Assembly: GCF_000150275.1 (NCBI RefSeq)
Contig: NW_002060944.1
Location: forward strand, 8,766,159 to 8,830,158
DNA from: Trichoplax adhaerens
Lineage: Eukaryota > Animalia > Placozoa
DNA: 64,000 nucleotides
Direction of reading: 5' to 3'
Within the stretch, counting starts at the first letter, position 1; every line of letters begins with the position of its first letter. The position numbers and the translations under genes are program-made. Shown here piece after piece: positions 94-57,679 of the stretch. The notes under the pieces were generated by a model that saw nothing but the letters and a program-made list of their open reading frames with translations, searched no databases and had not been told where the DNA came from.

Positions 94-315
94 AATAGAA
101 TATTTTTCCTGTGACATGACCATAGAAGCTCCTCTGGTAGCGATTTGCCATATAAGGATAATTTAGCTTCGAACAAATAAGCGAAGCAGCCGCGTTATTG
201 AAGGTATTTTGATCACAGACACTGCCCCAAGTTCCATTGTGATATATTTGCAGCGTTCCTGCCATTACATTATTGCCTTGAGAAGATGTAAGCCTAACAT
301 CGCCTTCAGTCGCTC
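94..315 (-). CDS. Gene D exon: N-terminal part of SRCR10 (domain split by an intron)
   Basis: [16 protein letters not shown]...LICSKLNY; the donor after 94 is at the same position as the intron in gene C SRCR10. Confidence 0.85.
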
Positions 316-19060: not shown

Positions 19061-20340
19061 GATAAATCGTTAGTGATGAGAGCATTGTCAATGTTACTGT
19101 CTCGATTTTTGAAAGTCGCTAAACGTACCTATGTTTTTCTATAATGATTCCTTTAAATCATTCTGATCTTAACGAGATTTAATGCATTTAACTGCGTCAT
19201 AGTATCGAACTATCGATTAATAAAAATTTTCACATTTTATTTCTATTTTGGCTAACGTAGAAATCCAAAACCCTAATTATAGAATACGTATTAGAATTGA
19301 GGTAGAAATAGTGAAAAATCAATACAAATTTGAGTTAAAAATGACCATGTAGATTGTCCTAACTAATAAAATTGAAGCAGTTTATATCTGGTAGTGTCCA
19401 GACTGAGATTGAAATTTAAAACTATAAGAATATTCATGCAGGTTTGTAGAGAGACACCGAAAAAGAAGTGAACATTCATTTTTTAATCGTAAACCATAAA
19501 AATAATTGCATGTAAGGTATCATTTAATACGCTTCTTAATGCGATCTCAAGTTCTATTAGTTATATTAATGATGATTTATATCCATAGTTCTATTTCAGT
19601 TAAATTTTCGTAATAGAATAGTTGCTGCTGCACCTATTATAATTAATAGAGAATAATTTTATGTGTGGTCGAGGCTATCAATGAACTGATAATTTTAATT
19701 TCAATAGCTATGGCTGATGAATAAGAGCCCCTTGATCTGTCTAGCCGTGCACGTATATCGTTTGTTGGCTGCAAGCTAATCAGTTACAACAGCTACTATT
19801 ACTTGAACTATTTATTCATCTTATTCATCCATTGCTGTTAATTTTGTTATGCCTTTCTCATGGATTCAATTTGGTTAAAGTCAAAAATTAGCGCAGCAAA
19901 AAGTAATTGTCATTACTCAGGGAATAATAAGGCTTTTATTAGTAATACTCGTATAAGATGAATTTTAATGAGTCTTCAGTAGGAATAGACTAAATTTTAC
20001 AGATCGTGTTGCCAATACAATCTTTAGAACTACTGTATTCGATAATATATCAATGAACAATATTTAATTACACAATAAGCCACGCCAATGACTTTAACTT
20101 TCACACAGAGCTAAAACATTCTTACAAATATTCTTTGCTATGCTAATGTTATACTTGAGGTAAGGAAATTGGAGGAATTTACTACATCTTTCCTTAGTTA
20201 TTCAGAACTATCAAGGTAGCGATGGAGATATACAACTTTTTGCACTCACATTTCTGGTCATGGACTAATGCTAATTCATTTTATATCGTAAAAATTTTAA
20301 AATTAGCTAACTATTATAATAAATGGACTAAAGAGTGTCT

Positions 20341-20429
20341 TTAGAGATCATCGTCTTCTCCGCGATAGACAGGATTGTCTAGTTCTTCTGATTTAGACTT
20401 CAGAATACTTTTATTCTGAGATCTTTGTC
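20341..20429 (-). CDS. Gene C terminal exon: cytoplasmic tail with NPxY ([28 protein letters not shown])
   Basis: Manual translation; AG acceptor at 20430-20431, TAA at 20341-20343; phase matches exon 20541-20584. Confidence 0.85.
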
Positions 20430-23400
20430 CTAGAGAAAAGCATTTATACTTAAAATTAGTTTGGGGATAGCTTCAAAGATCATATTAGATGACCTTAAAA
20501 AGATGTGTAACATCTTTTGATATAGTTACTTGGATCTTACCGAATTTCAGACTTTGCCTGTTAATTTTAACGCCTTCGATCATACTGAAAATTTATGTAA
20601 GAATTAATTATTTTAAATTTAAGCGGTACTTTGTAACACTTATTAATAATATAATAAATAATTTCGTATTTCATTTCTCGAGTAGAAAATGCAACTGATT
20701 AACTTTAAGTTGAAAAAAACTTTTTTTCAAAATTACCCTTTCTTTCTTAAGAAAATGTATGCTACAACAACGATTAGGATTACAACTACGCTTCCAATTG
20801 CAATTCCAACATAAGTACCAGCTAAAATCCAAAAACAGAACAAGATAAGACGTACTTCAAAAGAAATTTCTATCAATTTAAGAGATTGCCATAAATTTTA
20901 CCGTTTTGTGTAGTCGCACTTTGACAGTTATCCCCGCCAAACCCTCCAGCACAGCTGCAATTTGATTTTTTATCATAGTAATCAGTCATAAGTATAAATC
21001 AGCTTCATTATTGTAAATCAAGTGACTTATCAATAGTTCATTTATGTCGTATATTGTGATAACTAATTACCTGCAAATAGGTCTATTATTATTCATGCTG
21101 CATTGGCCATTATTGCTGCAATATCCTTGTGAGCATACAAAACCTGCAATCATAAATCATCAATCTTACGTTTAGACAGGAACTTTATTTAATTTGGAAT
21201 TGTTCTGTAGCTTTCATCCATTACTTTATTTCTACGTACTTATATTATATAATTGTGTTTCTATAAGTTGGATATTAGTTGCATTAAAAAAGCGGCATGA
21301 ATACGCTCCGTTATCGCCGATCGATAGTGGACTAAACACTAAATAAGACGTAATTACGGATTTTTGATCGCTAACTACTTGAATAATTTCGGTAGTATTT
21401 CCAGCTGTAATAGGAACTTTATTTTTAGTCCAAGTGATAGACGGCAAGGGACGTCCGTTAGCTTGACATCGGAGACTAGAGTATGATCCAACCATAAATA
21501 TACTAGTATTTGAGGTAATGGATACCATCGAAATTGGGAATGCTAAAAATTGAAGCATAAATTAAAGGATTTATATCATTCATTAATAATGTGGCTTCAA
21601 AAATCATACAATTGAATGAAATCTTTAACTTACGTGATAGCTGATTCTCGCAGTTGGTTCCAGTATAGAGTGGGTCACAACTAAGAATAACAATAACAGA
21701 TTGTCAGTTTTTATGCAACTTGTCTATAAAGGTATACATGCCCAAGTTTGACGGCTTACGTTTTAAAATCAACTATTGCTATTAAGCTGATAATTTTAAT
21801 AGTACATCAATATATCAGCACTATTACACCAACATACTGTATATTGTATAGTTAGCGTTTTACCTGCATACTGGCCCAGAACTTCCTGAAGTACATTGGC
21901 CTTGCGAATTACAAAAGGCCGGCGAACATGCAAACTCTGTAAGTGTAGTTGTTAAATTATAATAGCAGAATGAATCGACTTTATTCGTTGTTAAATCTAA
22001 AATTATAACTTTTCTTCGATCGTATAACGTCAAAATCAAGTTAACATCATATGAATAGCTTAAGTTTTGTGAAATCAGATATAGAAAGCAAATCAAAACT
22101 TACGGATCGTAGCCACTGCAATTTCTACTGTGTCAGTGTTACCGCCAGTATTATTATTACCGATGACTCGGCATCGGTAACTACCAGCATCACTTGGTAC
22201 AACTTTTGAAATTACCAGGTTCATAATAGATTTTTGGTTAGAGTTTAAAGGTGATAAAAAGGTTGTGAGACGACCTCCAATCGAGATTTGATTGCCGTTA
22301 TGTAACCATACAAATCTTGGCCTTGGTCGAGCTGTTGCTTCGCACTGTAATCCTATGGTCGTTCCAACATAGTATCGTGTAACATTTGATTTCCCAGTAA
22401 CGATACTGATAGGTAGATCTATAAAATTAGCAAATGATAGCAATTAGCTATTACATATTTATAATAAAACCTTTTACTTGTATAACTAATTCTTTACCGT
22501 AGACATTATTTTAGTACATGTAGTGAAGTATGAGGAAAACACTATAGTATTATACACGTGTGCAAGTGGAGGGTGCTGAGATTGTATTTTTCTCATACTA
22601 AATAGTAGTAGACCATAGTTTTATGTATCTAGAAACCTGCTATTATTTCATAGCTAAATTGTTTAGGCTAGCTTTGGATATGGAAAGCAGTAATATATAA
22701 CTCCCATACAGTCTTAGCTGATACTTATATATCAAATATACCACCAAAGTGGATAATGAAAAGCAAAAGTAAACTGAATCTCGTTACATGATTTAACAAT
22801 TTAAATTTTATAAAAGATTATTACTATTCCGTTCAACAGTTAAAGAAATCATAATATGTAAGTTTAAACTCTTTAACCAGAATTTATCAAATATAAGTAT
22901 AATTACAGTAAGATTGGGAGTTAAATCAAAATACAATATAGCTTACTTGGCAATACTGTCTGGCATTGGTTTCCAATGACTCCAAAATTGCAGCTTCAGT
23001 AGATAAAATGAAAATTGAACATCAATTCCGATGTTGGATTACAACCTTAAAGTTATTTGCTACGAGTTTTTGTATGATGATACGGAAACTGTCGGATTAA
23101 TTAATTAGAATTGAGATATGTATCTACGGTACCTGCATTGCAGCGAATCACTACCGGTGACTGTACTGCATATTCCATTATTATTGCAGAATCCTGTAGA
23201 ACATGACATTCCTATTTGCAGCAAAATTGAGTTAATGTATCAATATTTTAGAAAAAGAAAACCGCTTATTTACGTACAAGAAATTCGTAATCATTTATTT
23301 AGTGAAATATTTTGTCTAGTACTGATCTAGCATTTATAATTTTGAAATAGCAGTAAAATATAGCTTGAATGTGATCAAGGCTATAAACTTATTTTGATAA

Positions 23401-26400
23401 TTTGATACATATTAAAACTTACTTATGGAAACAATGGAGCTTTGAGCTGTTGCTCCGGTTTGATTATATTTCGCGGTACATCTAAAATCACCGTTGTTGC
23501 TTAATGTTAGGTTACTAAAGAGCAGGACAGATTTGGCTACTGTTTGATCAGCTGATGCTGAGTATGTGATCATAACATTACTTCCAGTAGAAATTGAAGC
23601 TCCATTCTTAGTCCAAGATAGTCCAGATATAGGGCGAGTTGTAGTTTGACAAGTTAGAGCGATATAGGCACCGTAAGTATAAGTAGTAGCGTTGCTTGTT
23701 AAAGACACAGTAGATAATGGGATATCTAAATAGTATAGTACAGTAGTAGATAAATATGTAAATATTGCGATATTTATAATGAGCTAGACCTTTCAATTTT
23801 AGGAGCATTTATACTTTATGTTCAATGAAGAAGCATCAGCCTTATAATTTGGCTTACTTTGTATCTATATTTATATGTTATCTGCAGCAACTTTTAGTAA
23901 TACATTTTTCTAATATAAAAACAGCTAGTAGAGTATAAATACAGACGTTAAGAAAACATACCTGGCAGTCTAGTCTGGCAATAAATACCGGTGTGGTAAG
24001 CATTACAACTAGAATATGTGATAGTAATGACGAAATAATGCGTAAGTTGTAATTTTATTAAAAGAAATTATACAAACTATATTTTTATGTAACTGTTATG
24101 CTATGTTAACCAGTGGATAAAGTTTTTGATAGATTATTAAAGATACACAAGTCTACTAGTAGAATTCATATACATAATATTAGCTATACACTATATTACC
24201 TGCAGATCGGGATCGAACTAACCATATTACATTGACCATTATTATTGCATAGTAGAGATGAACATGAAAGACCTAACATAGATGAGAATATTGTAGTGTT
24301 GGTGATACGTAAAGATTGTGATGGTATATGCATTAGATTTAAAATAGAAACCGTGTGAAGACTTAGCAACATGAGTAATTTATCAAACTAGGCATCGTAA
24401 GCATAGCTTTTTAGTAATGATCGGATCATTCTACATCAATTATGGCTATTATTTTAGCTATAGATTACTGTATTTACTAGATATTTATTAAATTACTGAA
24501 GAATACTGTATGCAGTACGAGTTTAAATGGAAATAAACTGAACAACATGATTGAGATTCTTGTACTACATTGTAAATTTATCGATAGTCTATATTATAAG
24601 CTATTATATTAATTTTCATAATAATTTGATAACGTTTATGATATAAATTTACGTAGATGATATTTTATTTTTAGGATTGAAGGCTTATAAAATTTAACAC
24701 TTAACTATGTGTAATTTCATGATAGAACTTACTAATATCAATGGTGTTGCTTTTAACCACTTTGCTCGTCGAAGACTGCCTTGCAGAACAACTGTAAGCT
24801 CCATTATCATTTATAGATTGCACCATGAAATACATAGAGGATCTAGCTTGGTAGTAGTTGTTACCAGGGATGGAAACAATGTTATATTTATTTCCTGAAG
24901 TGACCAGAGCATTATTTACGGTCCAGGTAATGGTAGATAATGGATAAGAGAGAGCTTCACAGTCTAATCCGGCGTATTGGCCAACAGTATAGGTAGTAAG
25001 ATTGGACTTGACAATAACGCTTCTTAGCGGTACAGCTATTCCAAATATCAAAGAAAATATTGGTGTTTTTGGGTAGATTTACACTTAAGTTGAATAAATC
25101 ATAATAATTAACATAGAATAGTACACTATATTTGTTAGATTATTGATTAAAATTTGATATTTTAAAACTGAATCCAATCGATCATAGTTTTGATTATTTA
25201 CTGAAATACGAATACTTACGGGGTAAAGCAGATTCGCAATAGGTTCCAGTATAGCCAGCATTACAGCTACTGTTGATGTTAATGTGAAAATAATATTATT
25301 ATATCTATAGGTAATATTTAATATGGTTTATGCAGTATGTTATAATACCTGCAAGATGGCGCATTGTCGGACATGACACATTGACCTTGGTTGCTGCAAA
25401 ACTGTGGTGAACAGCTAAATTCTGAATAATGAAAAATTTCATATCACAGTTCGTAAAAATTGATATAATAGGTTTGAAAATTTCGTGCATTGCAAAATAA
25501 GCGTCAAACTTTCATAAATATTATCATAAATGAAATTTATATACTGTAAAATATTATTTATGGGTTCAAGTCGTTTCGATATGCTTTGCTTGAGAATTTG
25601 AGGTAAATATAGATTGTGCAGTATTGACGGCTTACATATAAAATCAGTACACCTAAAGTAGCGTATACACCAGTATTCTGTGATTCTAATTAGTTCACAT
25701 CCATGCTTACAATAGATGGTACTTACGAAGGTTGATGAGATTGCTTTTTACTACTTTGCCTGAGGAATCTAAACCACTGCATGAGTAGACACCGTTATCA
25801 CCGCGCTTTAGGCTTTTAAAATAGAGTACCGATTTCGCGATATAACCAGACGTAGTACTTGTCACAAATCCAATGTTGGCATTAGATATGATTTGAACAT
25901 CGTTTTTAGCCCATAAAATACTAGATATGGGATAGGAATAGGCCATACATTGCAGCGATAAATATTGGCCGACAAAATATTGCGTAGCATTGGCTGCCAG
26001 CGTAACTTGAGATAAAGTCATATCTGTTTATACAGGTTACAATATGTTAGAACAGCTAGAGCAATTGCCTAATAATAATTTAGTGAAGTATTGTTTAATC
26101 GAAATGAACTTCGCAAGCTGATCATTTTATTTTATCTAGGCTTGATGTAAAACCATTTAAACCTACGAAATTATAAACTCTTTAGATTTACCTTTGACGC
26201 AGGCATTTCCGTTCCAATATCCAAAATCACATAAGCATGCATAAGTCTTCGTAGGCTTCAATATGTCTAAGCATGTTGCTCCTGAATTGCCACATGGTGA
26301 GCTAAGACAGGCACTGATCTCTAAATTTCGACATTTATTAAAAAGACAATTAAATGAAATTTATTCAAAATTGCTATAAAAATAAAAGTGATGCATTGAA

Positions 26401-29400
26401 GTCATTTTATAGAATATGAATTCAATTAAGATTAAGGTAAGAGAATTAAAGTGTTTGCGTTATTACTGTAGCACTGAAAGAATTCGCATTTACTAACCTG
26501 TCTGGCAGACGTAGCTGTTATTAGTTCGTGATTGTTTAATTGCAGAATGAAGTAATTTAATTTGATTTAGCACAAAAAATATCTTGATTAATTTATAAAG
26601 ATAGCTTGATTTTAATTCTTTAATATTTAAGGCAATATAAGACTGATATCATTGATATCTATTTCTAGTTACTATGGTACGTACTTGGATGGCAGTTGGT
26701 TGGCACCATTGAGGTTGGGGTCTAATGGCTGATCTGTATGTTTAGAGAGAACTTTATAAGTACACGCCGAAAAATTTTAATTCATAATCGAAAATTTCAT
26801 AAAATAATTATTTTCTTATTATGATTTATCAATCACAGTAGTATCAGCAAATTACCAACGCAGAATGCTTGAGCACCCATAGTAGTAGAACATTGACTTA
26901 TATCCCCGGCAAGATTGCTTTGGGTGCAATTGGCGAGATTTGGCTCTTTACCGGTACACCCAATCTTTCCAATGATTGTGGTCATAGAACTATTACCACA
27001 GCATTGGCTACGTAATTGCGTATCGGCAAATCCAAGTTGTCGACATGCTACTTGAGCATCTTGGAATTGCCAGAAGCTATTACAAACTTTACCCCAAGTC
27101 TGGCCATTGTATACTTCGACCAAACCTTGACTATATATTGATGAGCCTGTCAAGCGGATTCCAATGACTGTAGAATCTATGATTGGAAATTTTAAAGAGA
27201 AAATTGTGATTCATCACATCTGAAATTAGAAAGTGGCTATAAGTACCGCCAGATACACTAGGAAAGTAACATGATTACTTAAAATTACAATAAGTTTTAG
27301 GCTAGTTGTTATTTTGAAAGATCTTTTAATGCTTTATCCGTATTGCTATATTTTAGTCTGATAATCTTATTGTCGCTCAATCTTACAAAATAGACAATTA
27401 TATCCGCTATAGCCTTCTGGACACTGGCAAGTATAATATCCGACGTAGTCTTTACAAACGGCTCGTCCACCAGCTACAGATTGGCAAGGGTTGTTGGCGC
27501 ACTCGTTAATATCTACAAGCAATTAAACATGATCATGTAGACGTTATAAAGTAGTCGATATTAAGGACACAACGTATTTTATTTGATGAAAACGTAGCAT
27601 TATCATATATCACTTAATTTTCAGTACGCTCATTTTTATGCAACTTCTAGCACATTATGAGAATATCAAGTATTTATTTTTAATGATCGATTAAATCTTT
27701 GAATTTTACTTTATATTAAGTACCGGTTTGGCAGTCTTTTCCAGTAAAGCCTTTATTACATTGACAAATATATTCATCGTCCTGGCTCATGGCGACACAA
27801 ACACCGCGATTGTTGCAACTTTGTTTATTTGTGTAGCAGTAATGATCTGTTTAAGAACAGAGAAGAAAAGCAGCTTTTTACAACTTAGGATAAGAAAATT
27901 TACTTTCTAAATTACTAAACTATTAAGAAAGGCCATAATAAATGATATTTTATGATTGATTTCGCAACTATTACTGTGGTAAAGATAGATTTATTATAAA
28001 TTGATAAGATGTAGCTTGCATTAATGTGATGTCATGCAGTAACTTTAGTTATTCATAGAGTAATATAAGATAACCCTTATCTGTTGTCATTTCCTATATA
28101 ACTTAAATCGCTTCTATTAGACTTACTGCTACATTTGATGGCCAAGTCCATGTCATGGGTACAATTAGCGAGAGCTGGGACTCGGCGGGTGCAATCACTT
28201 GGAGATGTTTCGTGACCAAAGCATTTTAAGCTATCAAATTGTATTTTTTCTTTGCCTTTTCCATAGATAGGGAATGAATATACGTTGGTCGCATTACCGT
28301 AACCAGCAGCTCTGCATAAGACTGATGCAGTAGTAATATCGACATTATTGTTATTGCATACTGTGCCCCAAGCCCCATTTTGGTAAACTTCGACGAATCC
28401 AGTACCACTAATGATGCTAGTACCACTTATTCGTACAGCTCCATTTGCTACAGGCCCTAATTGACAGTTGAGACCATAATATCCTGGAGGACATTCGCAA
28501 TAGAAAGATTCTGCACCCAGTATGGTATGGCAGGTTGCATTTGGAGCACAAACGCTTGCATTGCACCAATTTCCTTGGCATTCTATGCTAGCAACTTCAA
28601 GATTTCCACAGTTTGCAACTCCCCAAGCACTATGCTTACATAAAGATAATGCTGTTTCAGTGCCTGTGCAGTCAAGATCATCTAGCCAGTATGGGGTCAC
28701 CTTTGAGCCATATTTTGAGCAACAGGCAAAGTCCTTAGCACTCGCAAATCCAAGTTGCCTACAGGCAACGTTTGCATCCTTAAGATCAAATCGGTCATCA
28801 CAAACTGATCCCCATCTACCTTTGAAAAATACTTCAAGATTTCCAGAGTATCGATTTGGTCCACCAAGCAGCCTTAATGGCTCAGTGTCAGATACTGTAA
28901 AAAAAATATTATTTCTTAGCGTGATCATAAACCAACTCCTTTTGATTGAAGATATGTGGCTTTACAATAATTGAAAATTTTAAGATAAGCCATGCTTAAA
29001 TATTACTTACATTGATTGCATAGGCTGCCAATGAATCCGGGTGTACATTTGCAAGTAAAAGCAGATGAAGATAGTTTAACGCATGTGCCATAATGGCAGG
29101 GGGATGAATAGCATGGATTGTCTGGTAGAATTTAGAATTTAACGTAGGTGTAAAAATGCAGTTATAGTTCGTATGTCTAGCATTGAGTTGATGAATGGAA
29201 AGGCCAATGCAAATTACATTCTACCTGTACAACTAAGACCAACAAGATCCGTGTAGTCACAAAATGATGATACTTGCGTTCTTAAGTTGCAATTTAAGAT
29301 TGAAGTTTCATTTCCTGTGCAGGTAATGCCGGCTAATTTCAAAGGAATAGATCAATATTAGATCATATCAACTTATTTTACCTATAAATTGCTCTAATAT

Positions 29401-35400: not shown

Positions 35401-38400
35401 TTATAAAAATGAAAAGAAAATTTCGAAAGGTTTCAATTTCACTCTTCATCCACGATAAACGTATCTCAGACTAACTATTTTAATTTTTATCAGCTTACTT
35501 GCGCAGTAAACTCCAGCATAACTAGAGAAACATGCCACAGTATTATTAGGATTACTACCAGGACAATCAAAGATGGATGATTCATAGCCTGAGCATTTTA
35601 AGTTTCTCATTCCACTTGTAATTAACGGGCTTCCAAATGCAGCACTGCTAGTAATGCTAGTAGCACCAGCAAAACCCATTTGTTGACATACTACATGAGC
35701 ATCGTAGAGCGTGAAATCACTGGAACAAATTGGTCTCTGTTCATTATTGTAGAAATATTGAACACGTCCAACATTGGGATGATAAGGTCTTCCAGCGACA
35801 AGCGTTATTGATTTATTAGTGAATGGCCCTATAAACAGTAGCAAGAAGATTAGTTGCTCATCTATTGATTTTAACATCTTTATCTGATCGATCATTGCTG
35901 CTCTATCCTATAATATGATCATTATTTATAATGGATACGCAATCCCCAGAGTAAAATGTCATTTAAAGTGTTCATAAGAAGACTTAGAGAAAGCTGATCT
36001 ATCAGATTTCGCAAACCGCATACCTTTTTCACATCTATTTCCTGCATAGGAATAACTACATTTGCATGTATATGAAACGGTACCGACTGGCGTGCATTGA
36101 CCGTTATTTTCACAAGAATTGGGATTGCAAAAATTTCTGAGCTGACATTTGTCTCCATAGTAACCTTGTGGACAGTGACATTGCGCGATTGTTGCAGGAA
36201 TACCAAAAACAGTGGTATGATTGAGAGAGCAAACACCGTTGTTAAGGCATGGATTAGTTTGGCAAGTGGAATCTACAAGTTATTATTTTGATAAAAATGA
36301 ATTTATTTTGAAAAGCATTTGCATATCAGCTATTAATCAGGGAAATAAATTATTCAATTTAGAAATATGAAATGTTATTCGAGGTATATACTTGTTAACA
36401 TGATCTATTATTTTGATGAAAGTAAATTTCGTTTTAAACCAATTGCATATTAGCTACGGTATTAATTAGCGCGTTGACTTGTTCAATTTAGAAATATGGA
36501 ATGCTATCCTAGCTATATACTTACTAATACACTCTACTCTAAATCGATTAAAGCAAGTAAACGTGTTTTTTCCATAAGTAAAGGAGCAGTTAGCAATTGA
36601 GCTTTCGCTGCCAGTGCATGTCATCGTATTGATCCAAATTTTTCTTGAAGGGCCAGAGTAGTCGCAACAGTAAGATCTTTTATAGCCTACAGAATAGCCT
36701 AATTGTTTGCAAGCCATAACAGCGATGGAGTCATCGTTTGACGTACAAATTGATCCCCAAACACCGTTGTGGAAAATTTCAATTGCTCCTTTTGCTACAT
36801 TTAGTACAGATGCGTTGGAGGCTTTATAATAGTCATAAATGCGAACGGAGCCTTCTAATGGTAGAGTAACTAGAGTGAAGTAGCAAATAACAGTTATAAT
36901 TTAAGAAAGCATCATCATGGTTCTGTTGTACGAAAATGAAATTTCTATTTATATTGGGTAATCTTGGCTTTATGCCTAACTCTGAATAGTAGTTCTATTT
37001 TAAATTTATTAATCGCTTACATTACTTTTAAATTGAGCACGATAGAATCATAGAATATGCGTTATGATATATAAGTACAATCAAAATTAAGCGCATTTTA
37101 GTGATTTAAAGAATAATTTTGTGATTTGTGATAATATACGGTACTATGCTAGATGAATTCTATTTCGTTTCTTAACAGATTTTTTTTAGGCTAAATAGGC
37201 CTAAATATTCATATCATGAATAATTTTAGATTCTGGTTGGAAAAAGAGCTACCTATTGGAGTCGTGCAGTTTGGACCAGTATAGCCGTATTTGCAAACAC
37301 ATCGAGTGGAAAAAAATCCAATTGAACGACAAACTTTATTTTGCGCTGCACAGGTCTTATTCTTTTCCGTATTGCAGTTGTTTTGATCTATGTTTTATAA
37401 GTGAATATCGTTCGAAAAATTATTTACAATAAATAGATAAATAGTTTCATAAAACATCAAAACAATTACTGTAGGTTATTTGGGCTGAATGTGCATGCTG
37501 AGATTTGCAATGAGCCATTTTTCAGTATTATGATAGGAATCCTCTTAACAAGAATATTGAAGTAAAATACTTTGGTAGATATTTGTAATATCTTCGTTCT
37601 TTGTCGGTGTTTCAAGTAAAGAATACAAATAGTGTATATCGCTATTGGTTACACTTTCATTAATTCTGCTTTCGATTTTTACTGGATTATTTTAGGCAGT
37701 ACCTTTACGGTTAGCCTTGACCGAAATTTATTCAGCTTTATAAAGTACTTACTTCTACATGTGACAGAAACTGCATTACTAGTTGAACAAGAGTCGGAAA
37801 TAACACCAAAACCAGCGTAGTTACACATCAAGATGGAAATTTCATCGTCAAGGCAACGTGTTCTACCTAGAACATATTTTGTAGCGGTACTCGTTCTTGT
37901 ATATGCTGATGCGCCAGAGTATCCAAGTTGTTGACATATAACGCTAGCCTCTCCAAGACCAAATGTGCCGAAGGAATAGCTACAGATTTCACCCCACGTA
38001 CCATTGAAGTAAACTTGGGCTAATCCTACTCCAGGTTTGACGGAATTAGCTAATCGTACGTCACCATCTTGTTGGGGTCCTATCAAACATAATTTTTATT
38101 AGAGAGTCAGCTAATTTTTCCGCAACTTGATGTTTGAAACTTTGAACACAGCAGTAAAAGCAAGAATGAATTCAAAACGAGGATATTGCATCGTAAAATT
38201 AAAATAAGCACAGCTTAATATGACAAACTGTATCTTATTCGCAGGCGTCACGCTCGAATAATTGTATTTAAAATTAATGTCAATGCAACCCTACTTCATG
38301 AAGAAGTCATCATTTCCGTAGGAGTGAAATATGAAACTTACTGGTCTGACATTGAGTTCCTTGATATGGATGTAGGCATTTGCAGCTGTAACTATTACCT

Positions 38401-41400
38401 ACTGGCTGACAAATTCCCCCATTCATACACGGGTTCAGGCCGCAGGGTTGAACTAATTAAGTTGAATAATTATAAATAAAACGTGTAATAAGTAATGCAT
38501 AAACTTAACGACTTAAATTTATAGGGAAAAATTGCTTTCTAGGGGCGTTGGAACCATATCATCGTTTTAAGCATTTTATAAAAAAATCCATCAAATTGCT
38601 AATTAATACCATATTTACTGTCCATAAAATATAAGTTCTAACAATGTTTGATAATTATTGGCATCTTACTGCAGCCTTTAAGCACACAAAACCTTAATTA
38701 TAAAGTATCATACTTATGCAGTCGTATTTAACCTCTACTTTATTACAGAATAACTCTGTCGTGATATGCTAATCGGCTACTATACACAATTTAGCATTTG
38801 CTATTTATGGTAATCAATTTCTAGCATTAATCTCTACGACTTCTACGGTACTGTCGATATTAGCAAATTTGTATGTTATTCTGTATTACTTATTTGATAA
38901 CCGATTTCACTACAATGGTAATCGGTTCGAAAAATAGAATCGATATGATTGCAGTTTCAGCAGTGACTACAAAGGTTGTCGGTATTAAGTCTATAGGGAG
39001 ACAAAATCTGCAGGAAAGTTCTAGCTCTTGTACCCGGATGAAATTACTTTAGGGTGCTTTTATATTATAGCTTAGCAAACAAAGTATTTTGTTTTGAGGA
39101 AGAAGCCTAGTACGCACGGTAATACAACATTTCTACTCCTAAGGTTATCGTTGCTAGCAACGGATTTATTAGTTCTCATTTAAAGTAGAGGAGTATGATG
39201 GATACTGTAGTGAAACTATAACCGGGTATTGGATATACTCGTATGTAGAATCCATTACAATTCTTTGGCTCTTTCTAATTGAGATACCAAGTCTACTATT
39301 TACTGGTTTAGTGACTTTAGTTTTATTCAGAAAATGATGTTTTATCGTGGTACTCACAAGTACTGCAATTTTGGCCACCATAACTGTTAGGACATGTACA
39401 AGTGTAGCTACCACCAGCTTTATCTATACAAGTACCACCATTCATACAAGGATCATTTGCACAGGCAAGCACTTTAACATGAAACGAGATAAAAATTTCA
39501 TTATTCTAGGTCATTAATACTATAAGAATGCTACCATCACAGTCTATCTTTATTCAATGGCTGTTAGAATATAGAAGATCTATAATAACTTGTAGACATA
39601 CTTGTTGCACAATTGCTACCCGTATAAGGAAAAGGGCATGCACAAGCATAGGTGGAACCATTCCCTTGGTTGGTACAGTTGCCACCATTCATACAAGGAT
39701 TAGTAGAGCATGCTAAAGCTAAATGTAAGAAAATAAATTCTACAATAAGTTCTGCTTAAGGAAATTGTTTTGTTTTAAAATCAATCTTTGAGCGTGAGTA
39801 AAAGAAGATGTGGCTTTAGTTCGATCAGTTTAATTCAATTTTATTAAATGATTGATTTAGATGCCTTATCGTTTATGATAGCTTATATTTATGCCTGCAT
39901 AATTAAACTTACTTATTTCACATCTTTGGCCAGAAAAAGGGTGTGAACAGTTACAACTATAGGCTTTACCGTTGTATGTAGTCATACATCTTCCACCATT
40001 TTGACAAGGGCTTGGAGAGCATGAGCTTGTACCTGAGATGAAAGAGAATAGAAGCAATTAAGCTCTAAGTTATGTTCATACGCGTTTAAGTGAATTCAGT
40101 ATGAAGGTTGGTGTATGGCTATACTGAAAATACAGCGTATGAATATTTTAAGTTGATCAAGTCTTTTAAAATTAAAGTAAAAGCACTTTCATATGCAAAA
40201 AATTAATCTTTACGGTGTCTGAATATTGATAAAATACTTATAGCCATTTTATGCATCAAAAATTCAGAATTATTTCAAACACTCGTATCTTTTAAGGTTT
40301 GCTTTCCAAACCATAATGGCTTAAAAATAATAAGCAACCAACATACTTGATTGATCACAGTTTCGGCCAGAATTTGCAGAAGGACATGAACAATAATATG
40401 TTGAGTAAGAAAAGTAATTAAAGCATAAGCCGTTGGTACAAGGGTTGTTACTGCATGAACCTGGACATTTCTGATCTAAAGTTAAAATATCAAGTAAATA
40501 TGAATATTAAATTTATTGGGTTATTATAAGTGCTATGCTTATTCTTATTTTGTAATCACAATAATACTTCAATGCCTACTTGGTGTATTAGCGGTTGTAT
40601 TATAACATTCTGGATTGTTGACACCAGGAGAACAGTAGCAGAAGTAGCTTGCTGCTCCAGAAGTAGTTAGAGAAATACATTTACCAACTTGACATGGGCT
40701 GCTGTTACATGGGCTATTTCTGCCATTGGAATCTGATACAAATATTGCAATACAGATGTTTAGATAGCCATGTTACTCAATAATACTAATTTATGATTGT
40801 TAGCTATCGTTATCAATTTAAATTAGTATTATATTTCTGAAATAACATTTATTACTGATGAATAAATAATTAAAAGATGCATTTGGTAAAGATATTACGC
40901 ATAATCAAGCTTTATTGATAAAATTAATGGAAATTTTTCAGTTTCACTGCAGATGTATATGCGATCTGTAACATTACGATATCACTGTTTTATTAAACCC
41001 CGATGTTATTAAAGGGAGTTATTTTAAAGTAGTAGTTTTGTATTGTATTCGTTACTATAAAGTGGATATTAGCATCTTGAAGAAAAGCTTTTCTTTTATT
41101 TAATAAATTAATTCACTACGTTTGATCGTTCATTTTCATTTGCTGCTAAATACAGTAGCCCAATTTACTTCTTCTAACTACTACATTAATATAACAGATT
41201 GAAGATATTGAGGTGATTGATAGAGTAGGATTTATAATTTTTAGCCGTATACCTATGAACGTCTTACTAAATAAAATCACTAGTTATCATCTACCTGTTT
41301 GGCAGTTAGCGCCAGAAAAGCCATTATAGCAAATACATGTTGGGGTTCCATGGATGTTTGCACATTTGCCTTGCAAGCAAGAGCTACCACCACATTCTTG

Positions 41401-43375
41401 TGAAGGACTTACTACATTAATGTTTTGAGGGAAATAACAATTAGACTTGATAAACAGCTTACAATAATCAAAATTATTTCCATGTAGATGTTCACTTCAA
41501 AGGTTTAAGAAATACATCGAAAGTATTAAGCAATTGGTAGTAATACAATATAAATTATACTATGCCAGTGTTGCAAAGTGGAAAGGTTACAACTTCACGA
41601 ATCAACTCCCTCTACTTCAAATTTAATTTGACAGTTTAATGCATGGCATTGTAGGTATACTGTTTACTTAATTAGACGCTTATCATACTAAATATTTCGA
41701 GCTAGGTTTACAAGTAGGGATTAATTAAGCATTGCCATAAATGTGTTGATACTCATCAAATGCTTCGAATACCTACATCTGCTGTTTTATTAATTTTATA
41801 TTGCTACCTGTTATACGTTCATAGGAACTGAAATACTACTGTATATCGTTGGCGTTAATCAGCGCCGTTCTGCATCAGTTTCATGACGCAGTTAATTGTT
41901 CATGTAGAGTGAATATGAATATTTAGTTTTTGTTAATGAATCTAATCTATTAGCCATTCTAATTGCCTTATACATACATACATACATAGTAATACAGTTG
42001 ATGATTCTATAGTCCATTTTTTGAACTGGACTTTCAGACTAGTTTAATATACGTAGAGTCGTTCTAAGATAAATAGCTATTACGGAGTAACGCTTGCATA
42101 GCTGTAGTAATATAGTCCCAAAAGATAACTTATCCAGGAATGCTTTAACATTAATTTATCTATAACATTTCATATATTTTTGATAGATAACTGTATAGTT
42201 GTGTAATATTATCGACAAATTGATAATTTATGTTCAATAAATTGATCATAAGCTGGCTAATACTGCAATAGTTTCGGTTCAATTATGTCTAAGACAGACA
42301 AATGGTTACCGTCTCTCTTGATCTTGTGAGATCGTCTGTATTTAGAATCGCACTATAGGTTGATGTTGGGGAGGACAAATTTGATAGTAGGCTCATAGTA
42401 TTAGTTTTCTATAATAGCTTTACTTTTCCTCGACACAAATTTAAATTTGTTACAATAGCTAAATATATATTTACCTTACGCTAATGCTTAATTCATGCAA
42501 AGGATTGTTAGCTCAGTTTACCGAATAATTGAGCTTAAACGTAGTCAATACAACCCAGATTGTTATTGAATTACCTTTCTATTGCATTATTAACTGTCTT
42601 TGATCAAGCATTGTATATCAATGATACAAAAGCTCCCTGAATAGCGCTTTTAAGCAATTTTGAAAACTTAATCATTCTAATATCACGTGGTAAATATAGC
42701 TATTGAAATATAATTAAGTATCAATAAGAGACTGTCACGGAAAGGGTGTTATCCCTGTGTTACCGTAAGTAGTATAGAACTACCATACAGTAGATCTCCA
42801 GGTGTAGTGGAGCAAGGCATAAATAATCTATTAGTTTAGTGCAGTGGTTCGCAACATAAGTTTGTGACAGTCTAGACCACTTAGAGTTTTTACTAGTTTC
42901 ATGTAGGAATGATCATGATATATTACACTAAATGGCAATTAAAATTAGTAAATAGATTATCTTTGTTGGTAAACCAGTTTAAATGACGAGTGTAATATTA
43001 TTCCAATGTCCTTTTCCATACAATAATCAGATTTCTTCAATCTTTTGATGTTGGTCCGAACTAAAATGTTTGCGAATCGCCTATATTGATCAAGCTGATC
43101 ATTTTTCTGCTCTCATAAACGTAGTATGCTTTCAATATTAACTCATATAGTTATATGTTTTAAGTACTTTATTAAATTACTTTTTGAATTTTTATCATAT
43201 ATTACTATTACCGTCCAAGTACGGTAACATTACTGTAACAGTTACTACTCTTATCAACTTACATTTAGGTACAGAACCGACAATTAGCCTGGATGATTCA
43301 CCATTTACTAGCAAAATGAGCTAAAAAATAGAAAAAATTTATCTTTGAGTTGAAATTTTTAGTATTAGATTTCAT
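20341..43375 (-). CDS. Gene C: giant type I membrane receptor, about 3,200 aa; SP, 7 EGF, 13 SRCR interleaved with EGF, 5 x (Ig + EGF), TM, cytoplasmic tail with NPVY
   Basis: 54 phase-compatible GT-AG exons summing to 9555 nt (3185 codons including stop) from 43320: 43263-43320, 41295-41411, 40580-40732, 40347-40475, 39913-40032, 39602-39718, 39358-39471, 38342-38452, 37753-38079, 37253-37387, 36525-36869, 36024-36272, 35499-35828, 35280-35399, 34686-35003, 34243-34575, 34007-34138, 33271-33600, 32930-33187, 32245-32574, 31952-32071, 31523-31846, 31206-31316, 30810-31124, 30532-30651, 29826-29936, 29485-29709, 29225-29332, 29011-29121, 28127-28894, 27724-27846, 27387-27512, 26856-27176, 26685-26733, 26498-26514, 26192-26320, 25727-26023, 25349-25421, 25220-25266, 24733-25035, 24200-24272, 23962-24008, 23423-23725, 23133-23211, 22947-22993, 22104-22418, 21864-21936, 21634-21680, 21240-21542, 21071-21143, 20902-20954, 20737-20821, 20541-20584, 20341-20429. 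The candidate ATG at 43373-43375 is one base out of frame. Confidence 0.88.
20737..20821 (-). CDS. Gene C transmembrane exon ([28 protein letters not shown])
   Basis: Hydrophobic helix followed by basic stop-transfer residues; 85 nt, the same size as in genes A and B. Confidence 0.92.
21240..21542 (-). CDS. Gene C exon: Ig-like (I-set type) domain 5, membrane-proximal
   Basis: [18 protein letters not shown]...DNGAYSC. Confidence 0.92.
22104..22418 (-). CDS. Gene C exon: Ig-like domain 4
   Basis: [19 protein letters not shown]...DAGSYRC. Confidence 0.92.
23423..23725 (-). CDS. Gene C exon: Ig-like domain 3
   Basis: [19 protein letters not shown]...NNGDFRC. Confidence 0.9.
24733..25035 (-). 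CDS. Gene C exon: Ig-like domain 2
   Basis: [18 protein letters not shown]...DNGAYSC. Confidence 0.9.
25727..26023 (-). CDS. Gene C exon: Ig-like domain 1
   Basis: [18 protein letters not shown]...DNGVYSC. Confidence 0.9.
26856..27176 (-). CDS. Gene C exon: SRCR13
   Basis: [26 protein letters not shown]...[11 protein letters not shown]. Confidence 0.9.
27387..27512 (-). CDS. Gene C exon: calcium-binding-type EGF domain
   Basis: [10 protein letters not shown]...[21 protein letters not shown] matches the cbEGF consensus. Confidence 0.85.
28127..28894 (-). CDS. Gene C exon: SRCR11-EGF-SRCR12 in one 768-nt exon
   Basis: ORF 28077-28928: LRLLGG...[23 protein letters not shown]...; EGF; [15 protein letters not shown]. 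Confidence 0.93.
29225..29709 (-). CDS. Gene C: SRCR10 split over exons 29485-29709 and 29225-29332
   Basis: [16 protein letters not shown]...ICSKLNY...[17 protein letters not shown]...LVGLSCT with a phase-1 intron. Confidence 0.85.
30810..31124 (-). CDS. Gene C exon: SRCR9
   Basis: [15 protein letters not shown]...ACKQLGF...[17 protein letters not shown]. Confidence 0.9.
31523..31846 (-). CDS. Gene C exon: SRCR8
   Basis: [16 protein letters not shown]...[12 protein letters not shown]. Confidence 0.9.
32245..32574 (-). CDS. Gene C exon: SRCR7 (correct frame missing from the ORF track)
   Basis: Manual translation [17 protein letters not shown]...VVCQQRGY...[13 protein letters not shown]...[11 protein letters not shown], no stops. 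Confidence 0.9.
32930..33187 (-). CDS. Gene C exon: two tandem EGF-like domains
   Basis: [11 protein letters not shown]...[12 protein letters not shown]; [12 protein letters not shown]...[12 protein letters not shown]. Confidence 0.9.
33271..33600 (-). CDS. Gene C exon: SRCR6
   Basis: [11 protein letters not shown]...ICRELGY...SCC...KVWVYNMKC. Confidence 0.9.
34243..34575 (-). CDS. Gene C exon: SRCR5 (absent from the ORF track)
   Basis: Manual translation [27 protein letters not shown]...VCQQLGF...[11 protein letters not shown]...[12 protein letters not shown], no stops. Confidence 0.9.
34686..35003 (-). CDS. Gene C exon: SRCR4
   Basis: [26 protein letters not shown]. Confidence 0.92.
35499..35828 (-). 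CDS. Gene C exon: SRCR3
   Basis: [15 protein letters not shown]...[11 protein letters not shown]...[11 protein letters not shown]. Confidence 0.9.
36024..36272 (-). CDS. Gene C exon: two tandem EGF-like domains
   Basis: [12 protein letters not shown]...[12 protein letters not shown]; [12 protein letters not shown]...[12 protein letters not shown] (a different frame from the ORF track entry). Confidence 0.88.
36525..36869 (-). CDS. Gene C exon: SRCR2
   Basis: [15 protein letters not shown]...ACKQLGY...SYCC...[11 protein letters not shown]. Confidence 0.9.
37753..38079 (-). CDS. Gene C exon: SRCR1
   Basis: [28 protein letters not shown]...ICQQLGY. Confidence 0.9.
38342..41411 (-). CDS. Gene C: seven N-terminal single-EGF exons
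   Basis: Exons 41295-41411, 40580-40732, 40347-40475, 39913-40032, 39602-39718, 39358-39471 and 38342-38452 have EGF Cys spacing and phase 1-1 borders. Confidence 0.88.
43263..43375 (-). CDS. Gene C putative signal-peptide exon ([18 protein letters not shown] / [19 protein letters not shown])
   Basis: The phase-1 GTAAGT donor matches the first EGF exon. The ATG frame and the downstream frame differ by one base near 43321, where an AG acceptor is also possible. Confidence 0.6.
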
Positions 43376-46300: not shown

Positions 46301-46540
46301 ATATACTGAACTAAGACAGATTTTTACATCAATAGCTTACATTTAATTTGCTATAAAGAGGCAAGATAAGTTTGAAGTGGTAGATTCACAAATGTAGGCT
46401 TTGCTTATTAATAAGTCTCTAGATATAAAAATGTACTATCGCTAACAGTTGCGTGAAAAAGCTACCAGATCGAATCGTCATTTTATAATTCAATTTTTGA
46501 GAAGGAGATTTAAATGAGTTATGAAAATAAAATGATAATT

Positions 46541-57569: not shown

Positions 57570-57679
57570 TTATAGATCGTTATCTTGTACGTCAAAGTCT
57601 TGATTTTCGTACCTTTCATCATAATTAGGATTTCCGAATGATTGTGACTCCATCGATTTCAATTTAAATGCAAATTTTC
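57570..57679 (-). CDS. Gene A terminal exon (KFAFKLKSMESQSFGNPNYDERYENQDFDVQDNDL*)
   Basis: Manual translation; homologous in position and C-terminus to the last exons of B and C. Confidence 0.85.

What the first reader, a model, noticed from the sequence alone, without database searches (positions are those of the whole stretch)
20341..43375. Giant EGF-SRCR-Ig receptor with an LDL-receptor-like NPVY tail: an architecture I cannot assign to a named family
Seen: 54 exons assemble in phase into about 3,200 aa, with 7 EGF, 13 SRCR interleaved with EGF (about 28 EGF in total), 5 Ig-EGF units, one TM and a roughly 47-aa tail containing LDNPVY. Known: SRCR domains bind microbial and polyanionic ligands (DMBT1, MARCO, CD163), and FDNPVY is the LDLR internalisation signal. 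DMBT1 (CUB/ZP), Notch (LNR/ankyrin), Crumbs (LamG), stabilins (FAS1/Link) and LRPs (LDLa/YWTD) all need domains that are absent here. Inference: a large endocytic scavenger or pattern-recognition receptor for feeding or innate immunity in a simple animal. Automated annotation would probably split it into several genes.
Basis: partly seen in the sequence, partly recalled or inferred. Interest (0 to 1): 0.9.

Follow-up and report, generated by a model that had tools for sequence, protein, structure and literature searches.

The report
Giant placozoan EGF-SRCR-Ig membrane receptor
This is a real, expressed Trichoplax gene of 55 exons for a 3,216-residue surface protein built from EGF, SRCR and Ig modules with an LDL-receptor-like uptake signal in its short tail; it belongs to a placozoan family that has been listed but never studied, so it is a well-read but not unprecedented find.

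Summary
On the minus strand, 55 GT-AG exons (stop codon 20341-20343) encode 3,216 aa. The order is 7 EGF, then 13 SRCR interleaved with 16 EGF, then 5 Ig-EGF cassettes, one TM helix and a 47-aa tail with LDNPVY.

Spliced RNA contigs from three studies join the last SRCR exon to the Ig part, through a linker exon, a 17-nt microexon and an EGF exon. One contig of 9,990 nt matches the whole model in length, so this is one gene.

Paralogue comparison points to an ATG at 44204 followed by a 58-nt second exon. No RNA was laid there.

The genome is Trichoplax adhaerens. The public model TRIADDRAFT_21116 is a 743-aa chimera of SRCR exons from this gene and a neighbour.

The gene sits in a tandem cluster of at least six paralogues. 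Four keep a hydrophobic-x-NPx[Y/F] tail motif, and one short member is only an Ig-EGF-TM stalk. This scan had already flagged the paralogues on other DNA.

Kamm et al. 2019 list 18 "SRCR+EGF" membrane scavenger receptors in Trichoplax sp. H2, so the class is catalogued but uncharacterised. An endocytic scavenger role is plausible but inferred.

The parts
44112..44204 (-). exon 1: ATG at 44204, 31 codons, hydrophobic start (MW...), ends in phase 0
   Evidence: Inferred. Paralogues D (14488-14577) and A (L006) also start MW + hydrophobic and end in phase 0. No RNA laid here.
43263..43320 (-). exon 2: 58 nt, phase 0 to 1, rest of the presumed signal peptide
   Evidence: A 58-nt exon with the same phases is found in paralogues D (13389-13446) and A (L006:3709-3766).
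41295..41411 (-). exon 3: EGF1
   Evidence: Pfam EGF E 0.004, below cut-off; six Cys; gene-model script.
40580..40732 (-). exon 4: EGF2
   Evidence: Cys spacing only, no Pfam hit. Conserved 58-64% in paralogues.
40347..40475 (-). exon 5: EGF3
   Evidence: Cys spacing only, no Pfam hit.
39913..40032 (-). exon 6: EGF4
   Evidence: PF00008 E 4e-8.
39602..39718 (-). exon 7: EGF5
   Evidence: PF00008 E 1.4e-5.
39358..39471 (-). exon 8: EGF6
   Evidence: PF00008 E 1.7e-9.
38342..38452 (-). exon 9: EGF7
   Evidence: PF00008 E 1.4e-9.
37753..38079 (-). exon 10: SRCR1 (6 Cys)
   Evidence: PF00530 E 2.8e-14.
37253..37387 (-). exon 11: EGF8
   Evidence: Weak EGF_Teneurin hit; Cys pattern.
36525..36869 (-). 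exon 12: SRCR2 (8 Cys, CC doublet)
   Evidence: PF00530 E 3e-16. Acceptor 36869 or 36854 is unresolved.
36024..36272 (-). exon 13: EGF9 and EGF10
   Evidence: PF00008 E 1e-8, two stretches.
35499..35828 (-). exon 14: SRCR3
   Evidence: PF00530 E 1.5e-16.
35280..35399 (-). exon 15: EGF11
   Evidence: PF00008 E 1.6e-6.
34686..35003 (-). exon 16: SRCR4
   Evidence: PF00530 E 5.5e-21.
34243..34575 (-). exon 17: SRCR5
   Evidence: PF00530 E 7.5e-18.
34007..34138 (-). exon 18: EGF12
   Evidence: Weak EGF hits; Cys pattern.
33271..33600 (-). exon 19: SRCR6 (8 Cys)
   Evidence: PF00530 E 2.7e-15.
32930..33187 (-). exon 20: EGF13 and EGF14
   Evidence: PF00008 E 1.9e-8.
32245..32574 (-). exon 21: SRCR7
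   Evidence: PF00530 E 1.3e-22.
31952..32071 (-). exon 22: EGF15
   Evidence: hEGF and EGF hits.
31523..31846 (-). exon 23: SRCR8
   Evidence: PF00530 E 3e-20.
31206..31316 (-). exon 24: EGF16
   Evidence: PF00008 E 2.4e-8.
30810..31124 (-). exon 25: SRCR9 (8 Cys, VCDD)
   Evidence: PF00530 E 4.5e-17.
30532..30651 (-). exon 26: EGF17
   Evidence: EGF hits.
29826..29936 (-). exon 27: EGF18
   Evidence: PF00008 E 1.7e-6.
29485..29709 (-). exon 28: SRCR10, N-terminal part
   Evidence: PF00530, profile positions 3-53.
29225..29332 (-). exon 29: SRCR10, C-terminal part
   Evidence: PF00530, profile positions 67-100.
29011..29121 (-). exon 30: EGF19
   Evidence: PF00008 E 4.2e-8.
28127..28894 (-). 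exon 31: SRCR11 - EGF20 - SRCR12 in one 768-nt exon
   Evidence: PF00530 E 6.5e-48, two stretches, plus EGF. Closest solved relative is CD163.
27724..27846 (-). exon 32: EGF21
   Evidence: PF00008 E 6.1e-8.
27387..27512 (-). exon 33: EGF22 (Ca-binding type, DINEC)
   Evidence: EGF_CA and hEGF hits. RNA contigs run on into it from 27176 (table 7).
26856..27176 (-). exon 34: SRCR13 (8 Cys)
   Evidence: PF00530 E 3.1e-18. RNA joint 26733|26856.
26685..26733 (-). exon 35: 49-nt linker
   Evidence: RNA joints; canonical sites read.
26498..26514 (-). exon 36: 17-nt microexon
   Evidence: The nine letters 'between' the joint 26322|26679 in three runs equal its core. Lengths add up: 49+17+129 = 55+9+131.
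26192..26320 (-). exon 37: EGF23
   Evidence: RNA joint 26023|26192. Pfam EGF E 0.006, below cut-off.
25727..26023 (-). exon 38: Ig1
   Evidence: Ig_3 E 1e-8; RNA joints.
25349..25421 (-). exon 39: EGF24, Cys1-4
   Evidence: RNA joints.
25220..25269 (-). exon 40: EGF24, Cys5-6
   Evidence: RNA joints.
24733..25035 (-). exon 41: Ig2
   Evidence: Ig_3 E 1.9e-8; RNA joints.
24200..24272 (-). exon 42: EGF25, Cys1-4
   Evidence: RNA joints.
23962..24008 (-). exon 43: EGF25, Cys5-6
   Evidence: RNA joints.
23423..23725 (-). exon 44: Ig3
   Evidence: Ig_2 E 2.8e-9; RNA joints.
23133..23211 (-). exon 45: EGF26, Cys1-4
   Evidence: RNA joints.
22947..22993 (-). exon 46: EGF26, Cys5-6
   Evidence: RNA joints.
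22104..22418 (-). exon 47: Ig4
   Evidence: Ig_3 E 5.6e-13; RNA joints.
21864..21936 (-). exon 48: EGF27, Cys1-4
   Evidence: RNA joints.
21634..21680 (-). exon 49: EGF27, Cys5-6
   Evidence: RNA joints.
21240..21542 (-). exon 50: Ig5
   Evidence: Ig_3 E 9.9e-12; RNA joint 21542|21634.
21071..21143 (-). exon 51: EGF28, Cys1-4
   Evidence: Gene-model script. Same 73-nt form as the RNA-confirmed cassettes.
20902..20954 (-). exon 52: EGF28, Cys5-6
   Evidence: Gene-model script; read.
20737..20821 (-). exon 53: transmembrane helix, then RKK
   Evidence: Read directly. Homologous TM exons in paralogues A and B.
20541..20584 (-). exon 54: cytoplasmic tail, first part
   Evidence: Only in-phase route with a GTAAGA donor. 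Not covered by the reads I laid.
20341..20429 (-). exon 55: tail with LDNPVY, ends DDDL-stop
   Evidence: Read directly. Motif conserved in paralogues.
19925..20340 (-). 3' UTR, about 416 nt, AATAAA at 19940
   Evidence: RNA contig X10 extends 768 nt 3' of 21240, of which 352 are coding. Signal found.

Best explanation
A single Trichoplax adhaerens gene (minus strand, about 20341-44204, 55 coding exons, mRNA about 10 kb) encodes a 3,216-residue type I membrane glycoprotein. From the N-terminus it has a signal peptide, 7 EGF, 13 SRCR interleaved with 16 EGF, a stalk of five Ig-EGF cassettes, one TM helix and a 47-residue tail. Most likely it is an endocytic or phagocytic scavenger-type receptor. 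The long SRCR/EGF array would bind multivalent ligands such as microbial surfaces, food particles, polyanions or debris, as SRCR domains do in CD163, DMBT1, MARCO and SCARA5. The tail motif L-D-N-P-V-Y (hydrophobic-x-N-P-x-Y) would recruit a Dab/ARH/Numb/GULP-type PTB adaptor that couples the receptor to clathrin-mediated uptake or engulfment. Shown here: gene structure, one spliced transcript, domain content, conservation of the tail motif among paralogues, and presence of PTB adaptor genes in the genome. Inferred: ligand binding, internalisation and the physiological role.
For: Domains: 13 SRCR, 5 Ig and the EGFs by Pfam, exon by exon. One transcript: 15 canonical spliced joints in RNA contigs from 3 runs in 3 studies link SRCR13 (26856-27176) through the linker, microexon and EGF23 to Ig1 and on to Ig5. 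The 2,526 nt of the X7 contig across 21240-27176 equal my exon sum exactly. Its total of 9,990 nt fits a CDS of 9,651 nt plus about 344 nt of 3' UTR. SRCR11 aligns best to CD163, an endocytic scavenger receptor (89.6 bits for one domain), and keeps the VCDD and WLDD positions. Tail: paralogue A has FGNPNY, B has YENPSF and E has YDNPAF, each near the C-terminus with a hydrophobic residue at -5, while the flanking tail residues differ. The genome has three PID/PTB loci above the Pfam cut-off, and the best one is most like the ARH/LDLRAP1 PTB domain (3so6, E 6e-10). Kamm et al. 2019 class such proteins as putative scavenger receptors.
Against: There is no functional data. NPxY motifs also serve signalling and adhesion (integrin beta tails with talin and kindlin; APP). 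Only 2 of the 13 SRCR domains keep the acidic VCDD pair that, from my own knowledge of DMBT1 and MARCO work, mediates cation-dependent ligand binding. Paralogue D shows no NPxY and F has DPIY. The N-terminus (exons 1-2) rests on paralogue comparison only. The last five exons (21143 down to 20341) were outside the reads I laid.
Confidence: 0.5

Rival explanations
1. It is an adhesion or recognition receptor (cell-cell, cell-matrix, self/non-self or symbiont recognition). The Ig-EGF stalk and SRCR array would mediate contact, and the NPxY tail would link to signalling or cytoskeletal PTB/FERM proteins rather than to uptake.
For: Ig plus EGF ectodomains are typical of adhesion molecules. From my own knowledge, the sponge aggregation receptor carries SRCR repeats. 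NPxY is also used by integrin beta and APP tails. A rapidly duplicating tandem family with variable Ig number (4, 5 or 8) resembles recognition loci.
Against: The closest solved SRCR relatives are scavenger receptors. The tail is very short, and its only other conserved feature is an acidic D-x-D-L end shared by C, A and B. No test here separates this from uptake.
Confidence: 0.25
2. It is a precursor that is shed. Cleavage near the membrane would release either a soluble SRCR/EGF agglutinin (DMBT1-like) or EGF-type ligands (neuregulin-like Ig-EGF-TM cassettes).
For: Each membrane-proximal EGF is split by a phase-2 intron between Cys4 and Cys5, confirmed by RNA. Another first-stage note (s1-744559) likened this to ErbB-ligand genes. 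Ig-EGF-TM is the neuregulin layout. Paralogue B is only Ig-EGF-TM.
Against: Cys1-Cys2 spacing is 4 residues, as in generic Notch-type EGF, not the 7 of ErbB ligands (read; the ErbB spacing is from my own knowledge). There are five tandem cassettes rather than one. No SEA, ZP or furin-type site was noticed, though I ran no cleavage-site search. A conserved cytoplasmic sorting motif is unnecessary for a shed ligand.
Confidence: 0.1
3. The SRCR part and the Ig-TM part are two adjacent genes wrongly merged.
For: A stand-alone Ig-EGF-TM paralogue (B, 46540-51196) exists with no SRCR exons upstream. An internal promoter producing a short isoform of this gene cannot be excluded.
Against: In-phase GT-AG joints 26856>26733, then the microexon, then 26320, then 26192>26023 appear in contigs from three studies, one contig being 9,990 nt. 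No ATG-plus-signal-peptide exon is needed or seen in 26023-26856.
Confidence: 0.03

Closest known systems
Placozoan 'SRCR + EGF' transmembrane scavenger receptors (Kamm, Schierwater & DeSalle 2019, PMC6321704, Dataset S3A; 18 locus tags in Trichoplax sp. H2, e.g. TrispH2_002800/01/03/04)
   Same: TM + SRCR + EGF in the same phylum. The tandem numbering with one gap (002802) would fit the cluster seen here, where one member lacks SRCR. That mapping is my guess and was not tested.
   Different: The paper gives only a list and a figure. In the text I could read there is no description of the Ig-EGF stalk, the NPxY tail, the exon structure or expression. The orthologue's identity was not established here.
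CD163 / DMBT1 (SALSA) / SSC5D: multi-SRCR group B proteins
   Same: Tandem SRCR domains. SRCR11 aligns to CD163 domains at up to 89.6 bits. Databases auto-name the paralogues 'DMBT1'.
   Different: No CUB or ZP (DMBT1). No EGF or Ig in CD163. Here 8 of 13 SRCRs are 6-Cys forms and 5 are 8-Cys forms with a CC doublet. CD163 uses a different tail signal (own knowledge).
LDL receptor family
   Same: LDNPVY against FDNPVY in a short tail after a single TM helix. EGF modules. An ARH-like PTB gene is present in the genome.
   Different: No LDLa repeats and no YWTD propeller in any exon. The resemblance is in the sorting signal only.
CED-1 / Draper / MEGF10 engulfment receptors
   Same: Many EGF repeats, a single TM helix, and an NPxY tail read by the PTB adaptor CED-6/GULP. 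This is a good analogue for how the protein may work.
   Different: No EMI domain. No YxxL/ITAM-like motif in the tail. SRCR and Ig domains are absent from that family.
SRCR+EGF giants of other invertebrates (e.g. Xenia, Dendronephthya, Halichondria, Antedon and Acanthaster proteins)
   Same: Long arrays mixing SRCR with EGF, EGF_CA or hEGF, by precomputed Pfam.
   Different: None of the 120 listed combines SRCR + EGF + Ig. Where Ig appears (fish proteins) EGF does not. None of the 150 best SRCR representatives has an Ig domain similar to these.

Membership tests
SRCR superfamily | At least one SRCR domain (PF00530) above the curated cut-off | tested here: met
   13 domains. 12 score 53.7-80 bits each, or 161.6 bits for the two-domain exon, against a cut-off of 26.1. 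SRCR10 is split over two exons.
Placozoan SRCR+EGF scavenger receptor class (Kamm 2019) | Predicted TM + SRCR (IPR001190) + EGF | tested here: met
   TM exon 20737-20821; SRCR and EGF by Pfam.
Placozoan SRCR+EGF scavenger receptor class (Kamm 2019) | Identity with one of the 18 listed H2 locus tags | not testable with these tools
   No H2 orthologue surfaced. Both big protein searches were swamped by SRCR-rich proteins.
DMBT1 / SALSA | CUB and ZP domains C-terminal to the SRCR array | tested here: not met
   No CUB or ZP hit in any exon of 20 aa or more. The C-terminal part is Ig-EGF cassettes and a TM helix.
LDL receptor family | LDLa (class A) repeats and a YWTD beta-propeller | tested here: not met
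   No PF00057 or PF00058 hit in any exon.
LDL receptor family | Cytoplasmic hydrophobic-x-NPxY internalisation motif | tested here: met
   LDNPVY lies 7 residues from the C-terminus and is conserved in paralogues A, B and E. Its function was not tested.
CED-1 / Draper / MEGF10 | N-terminal EMI domain and a YxxL motif in addition to NPxY | tested here: not met
   No EMI hit. The tail has no YxxL.
Neuregulin / ErbB-ligand type EGF | A single Ig-EGF-TM unit with ErbB-ligand cysteine spacing (Cys1-x7-Cys2; own knowledge) | tested here: not met
   Five cassettes; Cys1-x4-Cys2 in all five. The intron between Cys4 and Cys5 is present, but that alone does not define the family.
Notch / Crumbs / stabilin | LNR + ankyrin (Notch); LamG (Crumbs); FAS1 + Link (stabilin) | tested here: not met
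   None of these Pfam families hit any exon.

The most novel reading that the evidence does not exclude
Placozoans may have built a lineage-specific, modular receptor system. A stand-alone Ig-EGF-TM 'stalk' with a hydrophobic-x-NPx[Y/F] uptake signal still exists as the short gene B. In the tandem paralogues C, D, A and F that same stalk carries different EGF/SRCR arrays. This would give a diversifying family of endocytic pattern-recognition receptors that lets an animal without dedicated immune cells or a gut sort food, symbionts and pathogens.
Probability: 0.25. Interest if true: 0.65.

Novelty: new variant of a known kind. Interest (0 to 1): 0.42.

Why it matters
Placozoans feed by external digestion and uptake through a simple epithelium, and they harbour intracellular bacteria. 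Which surface receptors do the sorting is unknown. This report gives a full-length model for one member of their expanded SRCR+EGF receptor family, with RNA support across its 3' 6 kb. It corrects a chimeric public annotation. It also points to a testable handle: the conserved NPxY tail and an ARH-like adaptor gene in the same genome. The tandem cluster, with a stalk-only member, gives a clean case for studying how giant mosaic receptors arise by exon shuffling, since 49 of its 54 introns are phase 1. It is not a new kind of molecule, because the class is already listed in the literature and SRCR+EGF giants are common in invertebrates.

Tried and rejected
2. An ORF beginning MEIILII just upstream of EGF1 (ATG 41483): it would need a 35- or 52-nt intron, and the shortest intron in this gene is 79 nt. 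Rejected.
3. My two gene-model scripts gave junk at both gene ends, mis-set three boundaries (21936, 26023 and the linker region) and left the exon 12 acceptor (36869 or 36854) undecided. I corrected the three from RNA joints and by hand.
4. DNA and translated comparison of the 5' regions of genes C and D found nothing conserved. Support for the 5' exons came only from exon length, phase and the MW start.
5. The search of protein representatives with the 255-aa SRCR-EGF-SRCR exon was swamped by multi-SRCR proteins. Only the partial TRIADDRAFT_21116 matched this locus.
6. The search for homologous proteins with paralogue TRIADDRAFT_52608 (region 150-510) was again swamped, and no H2 orthologue appeared.
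7. The look-up of encoding contigs for TRIADDRAFT_21116: nothing on record.
8. Complex prediction of the ARH-like PTB domain with the last 30 tail residues returned 'no answer' (score 0.01). This is neither support nor evidence against binding.
9. A paper search for TRIADDRAFT_21116 found nothing. The 2025 placozoan secretory-cell paper mentions only a different SRCR/VWD mucin-like gene.
10. Of eight exonic differences between RNA contigs and the reference, four are synonymous and four are not. That is too few to say anything about selection.
It was translated only inside local scripts for counting. SignalP, DeepTMHMM and InterProScan on the whole protein were therefore left out.
12. Read laying was given 5,961 letters.

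Full report
**What is there**

The window is AT-rich (about 32% G+C). It is G000:C1413:8766159-8830158 on a 9.74-Mb scaffold of Trichoplax adhaerens. The species follows from the 99-100% match of local exons to NCBI protein XP_002110176.1 (TRIADDRAFT_21116). Earlier scan notes on this genome also name Trichoplax.

The gene lies on the minus strand. Stop-free stretches there are rich in cysteine and read as EGF, SRCR and Ig modules.

**Gene model**

I built the model with a splice-aware dynamic-programming script. I then corrected it by hand at the 3' end and from RNA joints.

The final model has 55 coding exons, a CDS of 9,651 nt and 3,216 aa. Every intron is GT-AG. Fifty introns are 79-905 nt; the two inferred 5' introns are about 0.8 and 1.9 kb. 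Of the 54 introns, 49 are phase 1, which is the classic signature of shuffled extracellular modules.

All database work was done exon by exon, by reference. Whole-protein SignalP, DeepTMHMM and InterProScan were therefore left out.

**Domains**

- **SRCR:** Pfam finds SRCR (PF00530) in 13 places. Twelve are above the curated cut-off. SRCR10 is split over two exons.
- **Ig:** five exons hit Ig_3, I-set and Ig_2 at E 1e-8 to 6e-13.
- **EGF:** most single-exon EGFs hit EGF or hEGF models. EGF2 and EGF3 are recognised only by cysteine spacing.
- **Order:** 7 EGF; 13 SRCR interleaved with 16 EGF; five Ig-EGF cassettes; TM; a 47-aa tail ending [13 protein letters not shown]. That makes 28 EGF-like units.
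- **SRCR subtypes:** eight SRCRs have 6 Cys. Five (numbers 2, 6, 9, 11 and 13) have 8 Cys with a CC doublet. Only SRCR9 and SRCR11 keep the VCDD pair.
- **Closest solved relative:** SRCR11 aligns best to CD163.
- **Absent:** no CUB, ZP, LDLa, YWTD, LamG, LNR, FAS1, Link, EMI or SEA appears in any scanned exon.

**One transcript**

I laid Logan contigs of four runs on 21240-27200 (5,961 letters). X6, X7 and X10, from three different studies, carry the same 15 spliced joints, all CT..AC on the plus strand, which is GT..AG for a minus-strand gene. X4 holds unspliced pieces and behaves like DNA.

The joints link SRCR13 (26856-27176) to a 49-nt linker exon (26685-26733), then a microexon, then EGF23 (26192-26320), then Ig1 (25727-26023), and on through every split EGF to Ig5.

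The aligner reported the middle step as joint 26322|26679 with nine letters between. Reading the sequence shows that these nine letters are the core of a 17-nt exon at 26498-26514 with canonical AG and GT sites. Its first five and last two letters also fit the flanking intron ends, which is why the aligner absorbed them. The lengths agree (49+17+129 = 55+9+131), and the reading frame is kept only with this exon.

Contig X7 is 9,990 nt. Its 2,526 nt across 21240-27176 equal my exon sum exactly. Its remaining 696 nt on the 3' side and 6,768 nt on the 5' side fit 352 coding nt plus 344 nt of 3' UTR, and 6,781 nt up to the proposed ATG. An extra short isoform from an internal promoter is not excluded.

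**The ends**

- **3' end:** the TM exon ends in phase 2. The only in-phase route with good sites is a 44-nt exon (20541-20584, donor GTAAGA) followed by the last exon (20341-20429). This gives the 47-aa tail. AATAAA at 19940 fits the 3' end of contig X10. These last exons were outside the stretch I laid.
- **5' end:** The EGF1 exon (acceptor at 41411) needs an upstream partner ending in phase 1. A 58-nt exon at 43263-43320 (phase 0 to 1) has good sites.
- **Paralogue support for the 5' end:** paralogue D has exactly one such candidate, also 58 nt (13389-13446). Paralogue A has one too, also 58 nt (L006:3709-3766). Upstream, all three genes have an ATG exon that starts MW plus a hydrophobic run and ends in phase 0: C at 44112-44204, D at 14488-14577, and A with a perfect ATG|GTAAGT donor after 11 codons. 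I put about 75% on this start. It needs reads.

**Family context**

Six-frame searches of the genome and of the window show a tandem, same-strand cluster spanning about 170 kb.

| Gene | Position | Content |
|---|---|---|
| E | before the window | tail YDNPAF |
| D | window 83-14577, with its five Ig-EGF cassettes before the window start | EGF/SRCR array colinear with C; no NPxY seen |
| C | this gene | as described above |
| B | 46540-51196 | four Ig exons with split EGF exons between them, TM, YENPSF tail; no SRCR or EGF array upstream |
| A | tail at 57632, running beyond 64000 | eight Ig, SRCR array, tail FGNPNY |
| F | about 60 kb beyond the window end | four Ig, SRCR array, tail DPIY |

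Further relatives lie on other scaffolds, for example TRIADDRAFT_52608 (3,639 aa). First-stage notes of this scan had already flagged D's cassettes (s1-744559), F (s1-753026) and another member (s1-747304). The scan has therefore found this family before, on other DNA.

The public model for this locus, TRIADDRAFT_21116 (743 aa, partial), takes two SRCRs from gene A and five from gene C, and skips gene B and all EGF exons.

**How it probably works**

The tail is the most informative part. Genes C, A, B and E keep a hydrophobic residue, any residue, then N-P-x-[Y/F] close to the C-terminus, while the rest of the tail differs. That is the consensus read by Dab-type PTB domains. LDNPVY differs from the LDL-receptor signal FDNPVY by one conservative residue.

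The genome has three PID/PTB loci. The best resembles the ARH/LDLRAP1 PTB domain. A structure prediction of that domain with the tail gave no verdict and is not used as evidence.

Taken with SRCR domains most like those of CD163, the best reading is an endocytic or engulfment receptor whose long SRCR/EGF array captures multivalent ligands. This mechanism is inferred. Adhesion or recognition, and shedding, remain live rivals.

**Comparison with what is known, and novelty**

No named, characterised family has EGF + SRCR + Ig + TM. Among the 150 best SRCR representatives none has a similar Ig domain. Among 120 long SRCR proteins with precomputed Pfam, SRCR+EGF occurs in cnidarians, sponges and echinoderms, and SRCR+Ig occurs in fishes, but the triple combination does not appear.

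The class is nonetheless catalogued. Kamm et al. 2019 list 18 transmembrane SRCR+EGF putative scavenger receptors in Trichoplax sp. H2 and note that most placozoan combinations are phylum-restricted. I therefore rate this as a new variant of a known kind.

The new details are the stalk-only paralogue, the conserved PTB-type motif and the microexon. The function remains untested.

Noticed in passing
window 46540-51196 (minus): Paralogue B is a short gene with four Ig exons and split EGF exons between them, a TM exon (47001-47087) and a tail ending YENPSF...DKDL-stop. There are no SRCR or EGF-array exons in the 6 kb upstream. The stalk of the giant receptors therefore also exists as a stand-alone gene.
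   Followed up: partly
window 57590-64000 and beyond (G000:C1413:8823750-8852500, minus): Paralogue A has eight Ig exons, an SRCR array beyond the window end, a tail with FGNPNY...DNDL-stop, and a clean signal peptide split as an 11-codon exon plus a 58-nt exon.
   Followed up: partly
window 83-14577 (minus), continuing before the window start: Paralogue D has an EGF/SRCR array colinear with this gene (for example, the double-EGF exon at 7720-7965 is 57% identical). Its five Ig-EGF cassettes lie before the window. No NPxY was seen in its tail region (L001).
   Followed up: partly
window 26498-26514 (minus): A 17-nt microexon is needed to keep the reading frame. It appears in RNA contigs of three studies but was reported by the aligner as 'nine letters between' a non-canonical joint.
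   Followed up: yes
window 26836-35004 plus G000:C1413:8835432-8836181: The public protein TRIADDRAFT_21116 (XP_002110176.1, 743 aa, partial) is a chimera. It takes SRCR exons from two different paralogues about 35-43 kb apart and omits all EGF exons.
   Followed up: yes
window 20341-20352; 46540 region; 57590 region: Genes C, B and A all end in D-x-D-L-stop (DDDL, DKDL, DNDL), a second conserved tail feature of unknown role.
   Followed up: no
window 22380: All three organism-A runs that cover this position (X4, which looks like DNA, plus X7 and X10) read A where the reference has T, changing Thr to Ser in Ig4. This is a reference error or a strain polymorphism, not editing evidence.
   Followed up: no
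L008:660-2096 (+) = G000:C1397:1037359-1038795: A 479-aa open frame that looks like a piggyBac-type transposase lies upstream of another family member on scaffold C1397. This rests on my own recognition only and was not searched.
   Followed up: no
gene C, SRCR domains 1-13: Two SRCR subtypes alternate. Eight have 6 Cys. Five (numbers 2, 6, 9, 11 and 13) have 8 Cys with a CC doublet in place of the usual group-B position. Only SRCR9 and SRCR11 keep VCDD.
   Followed up: partly
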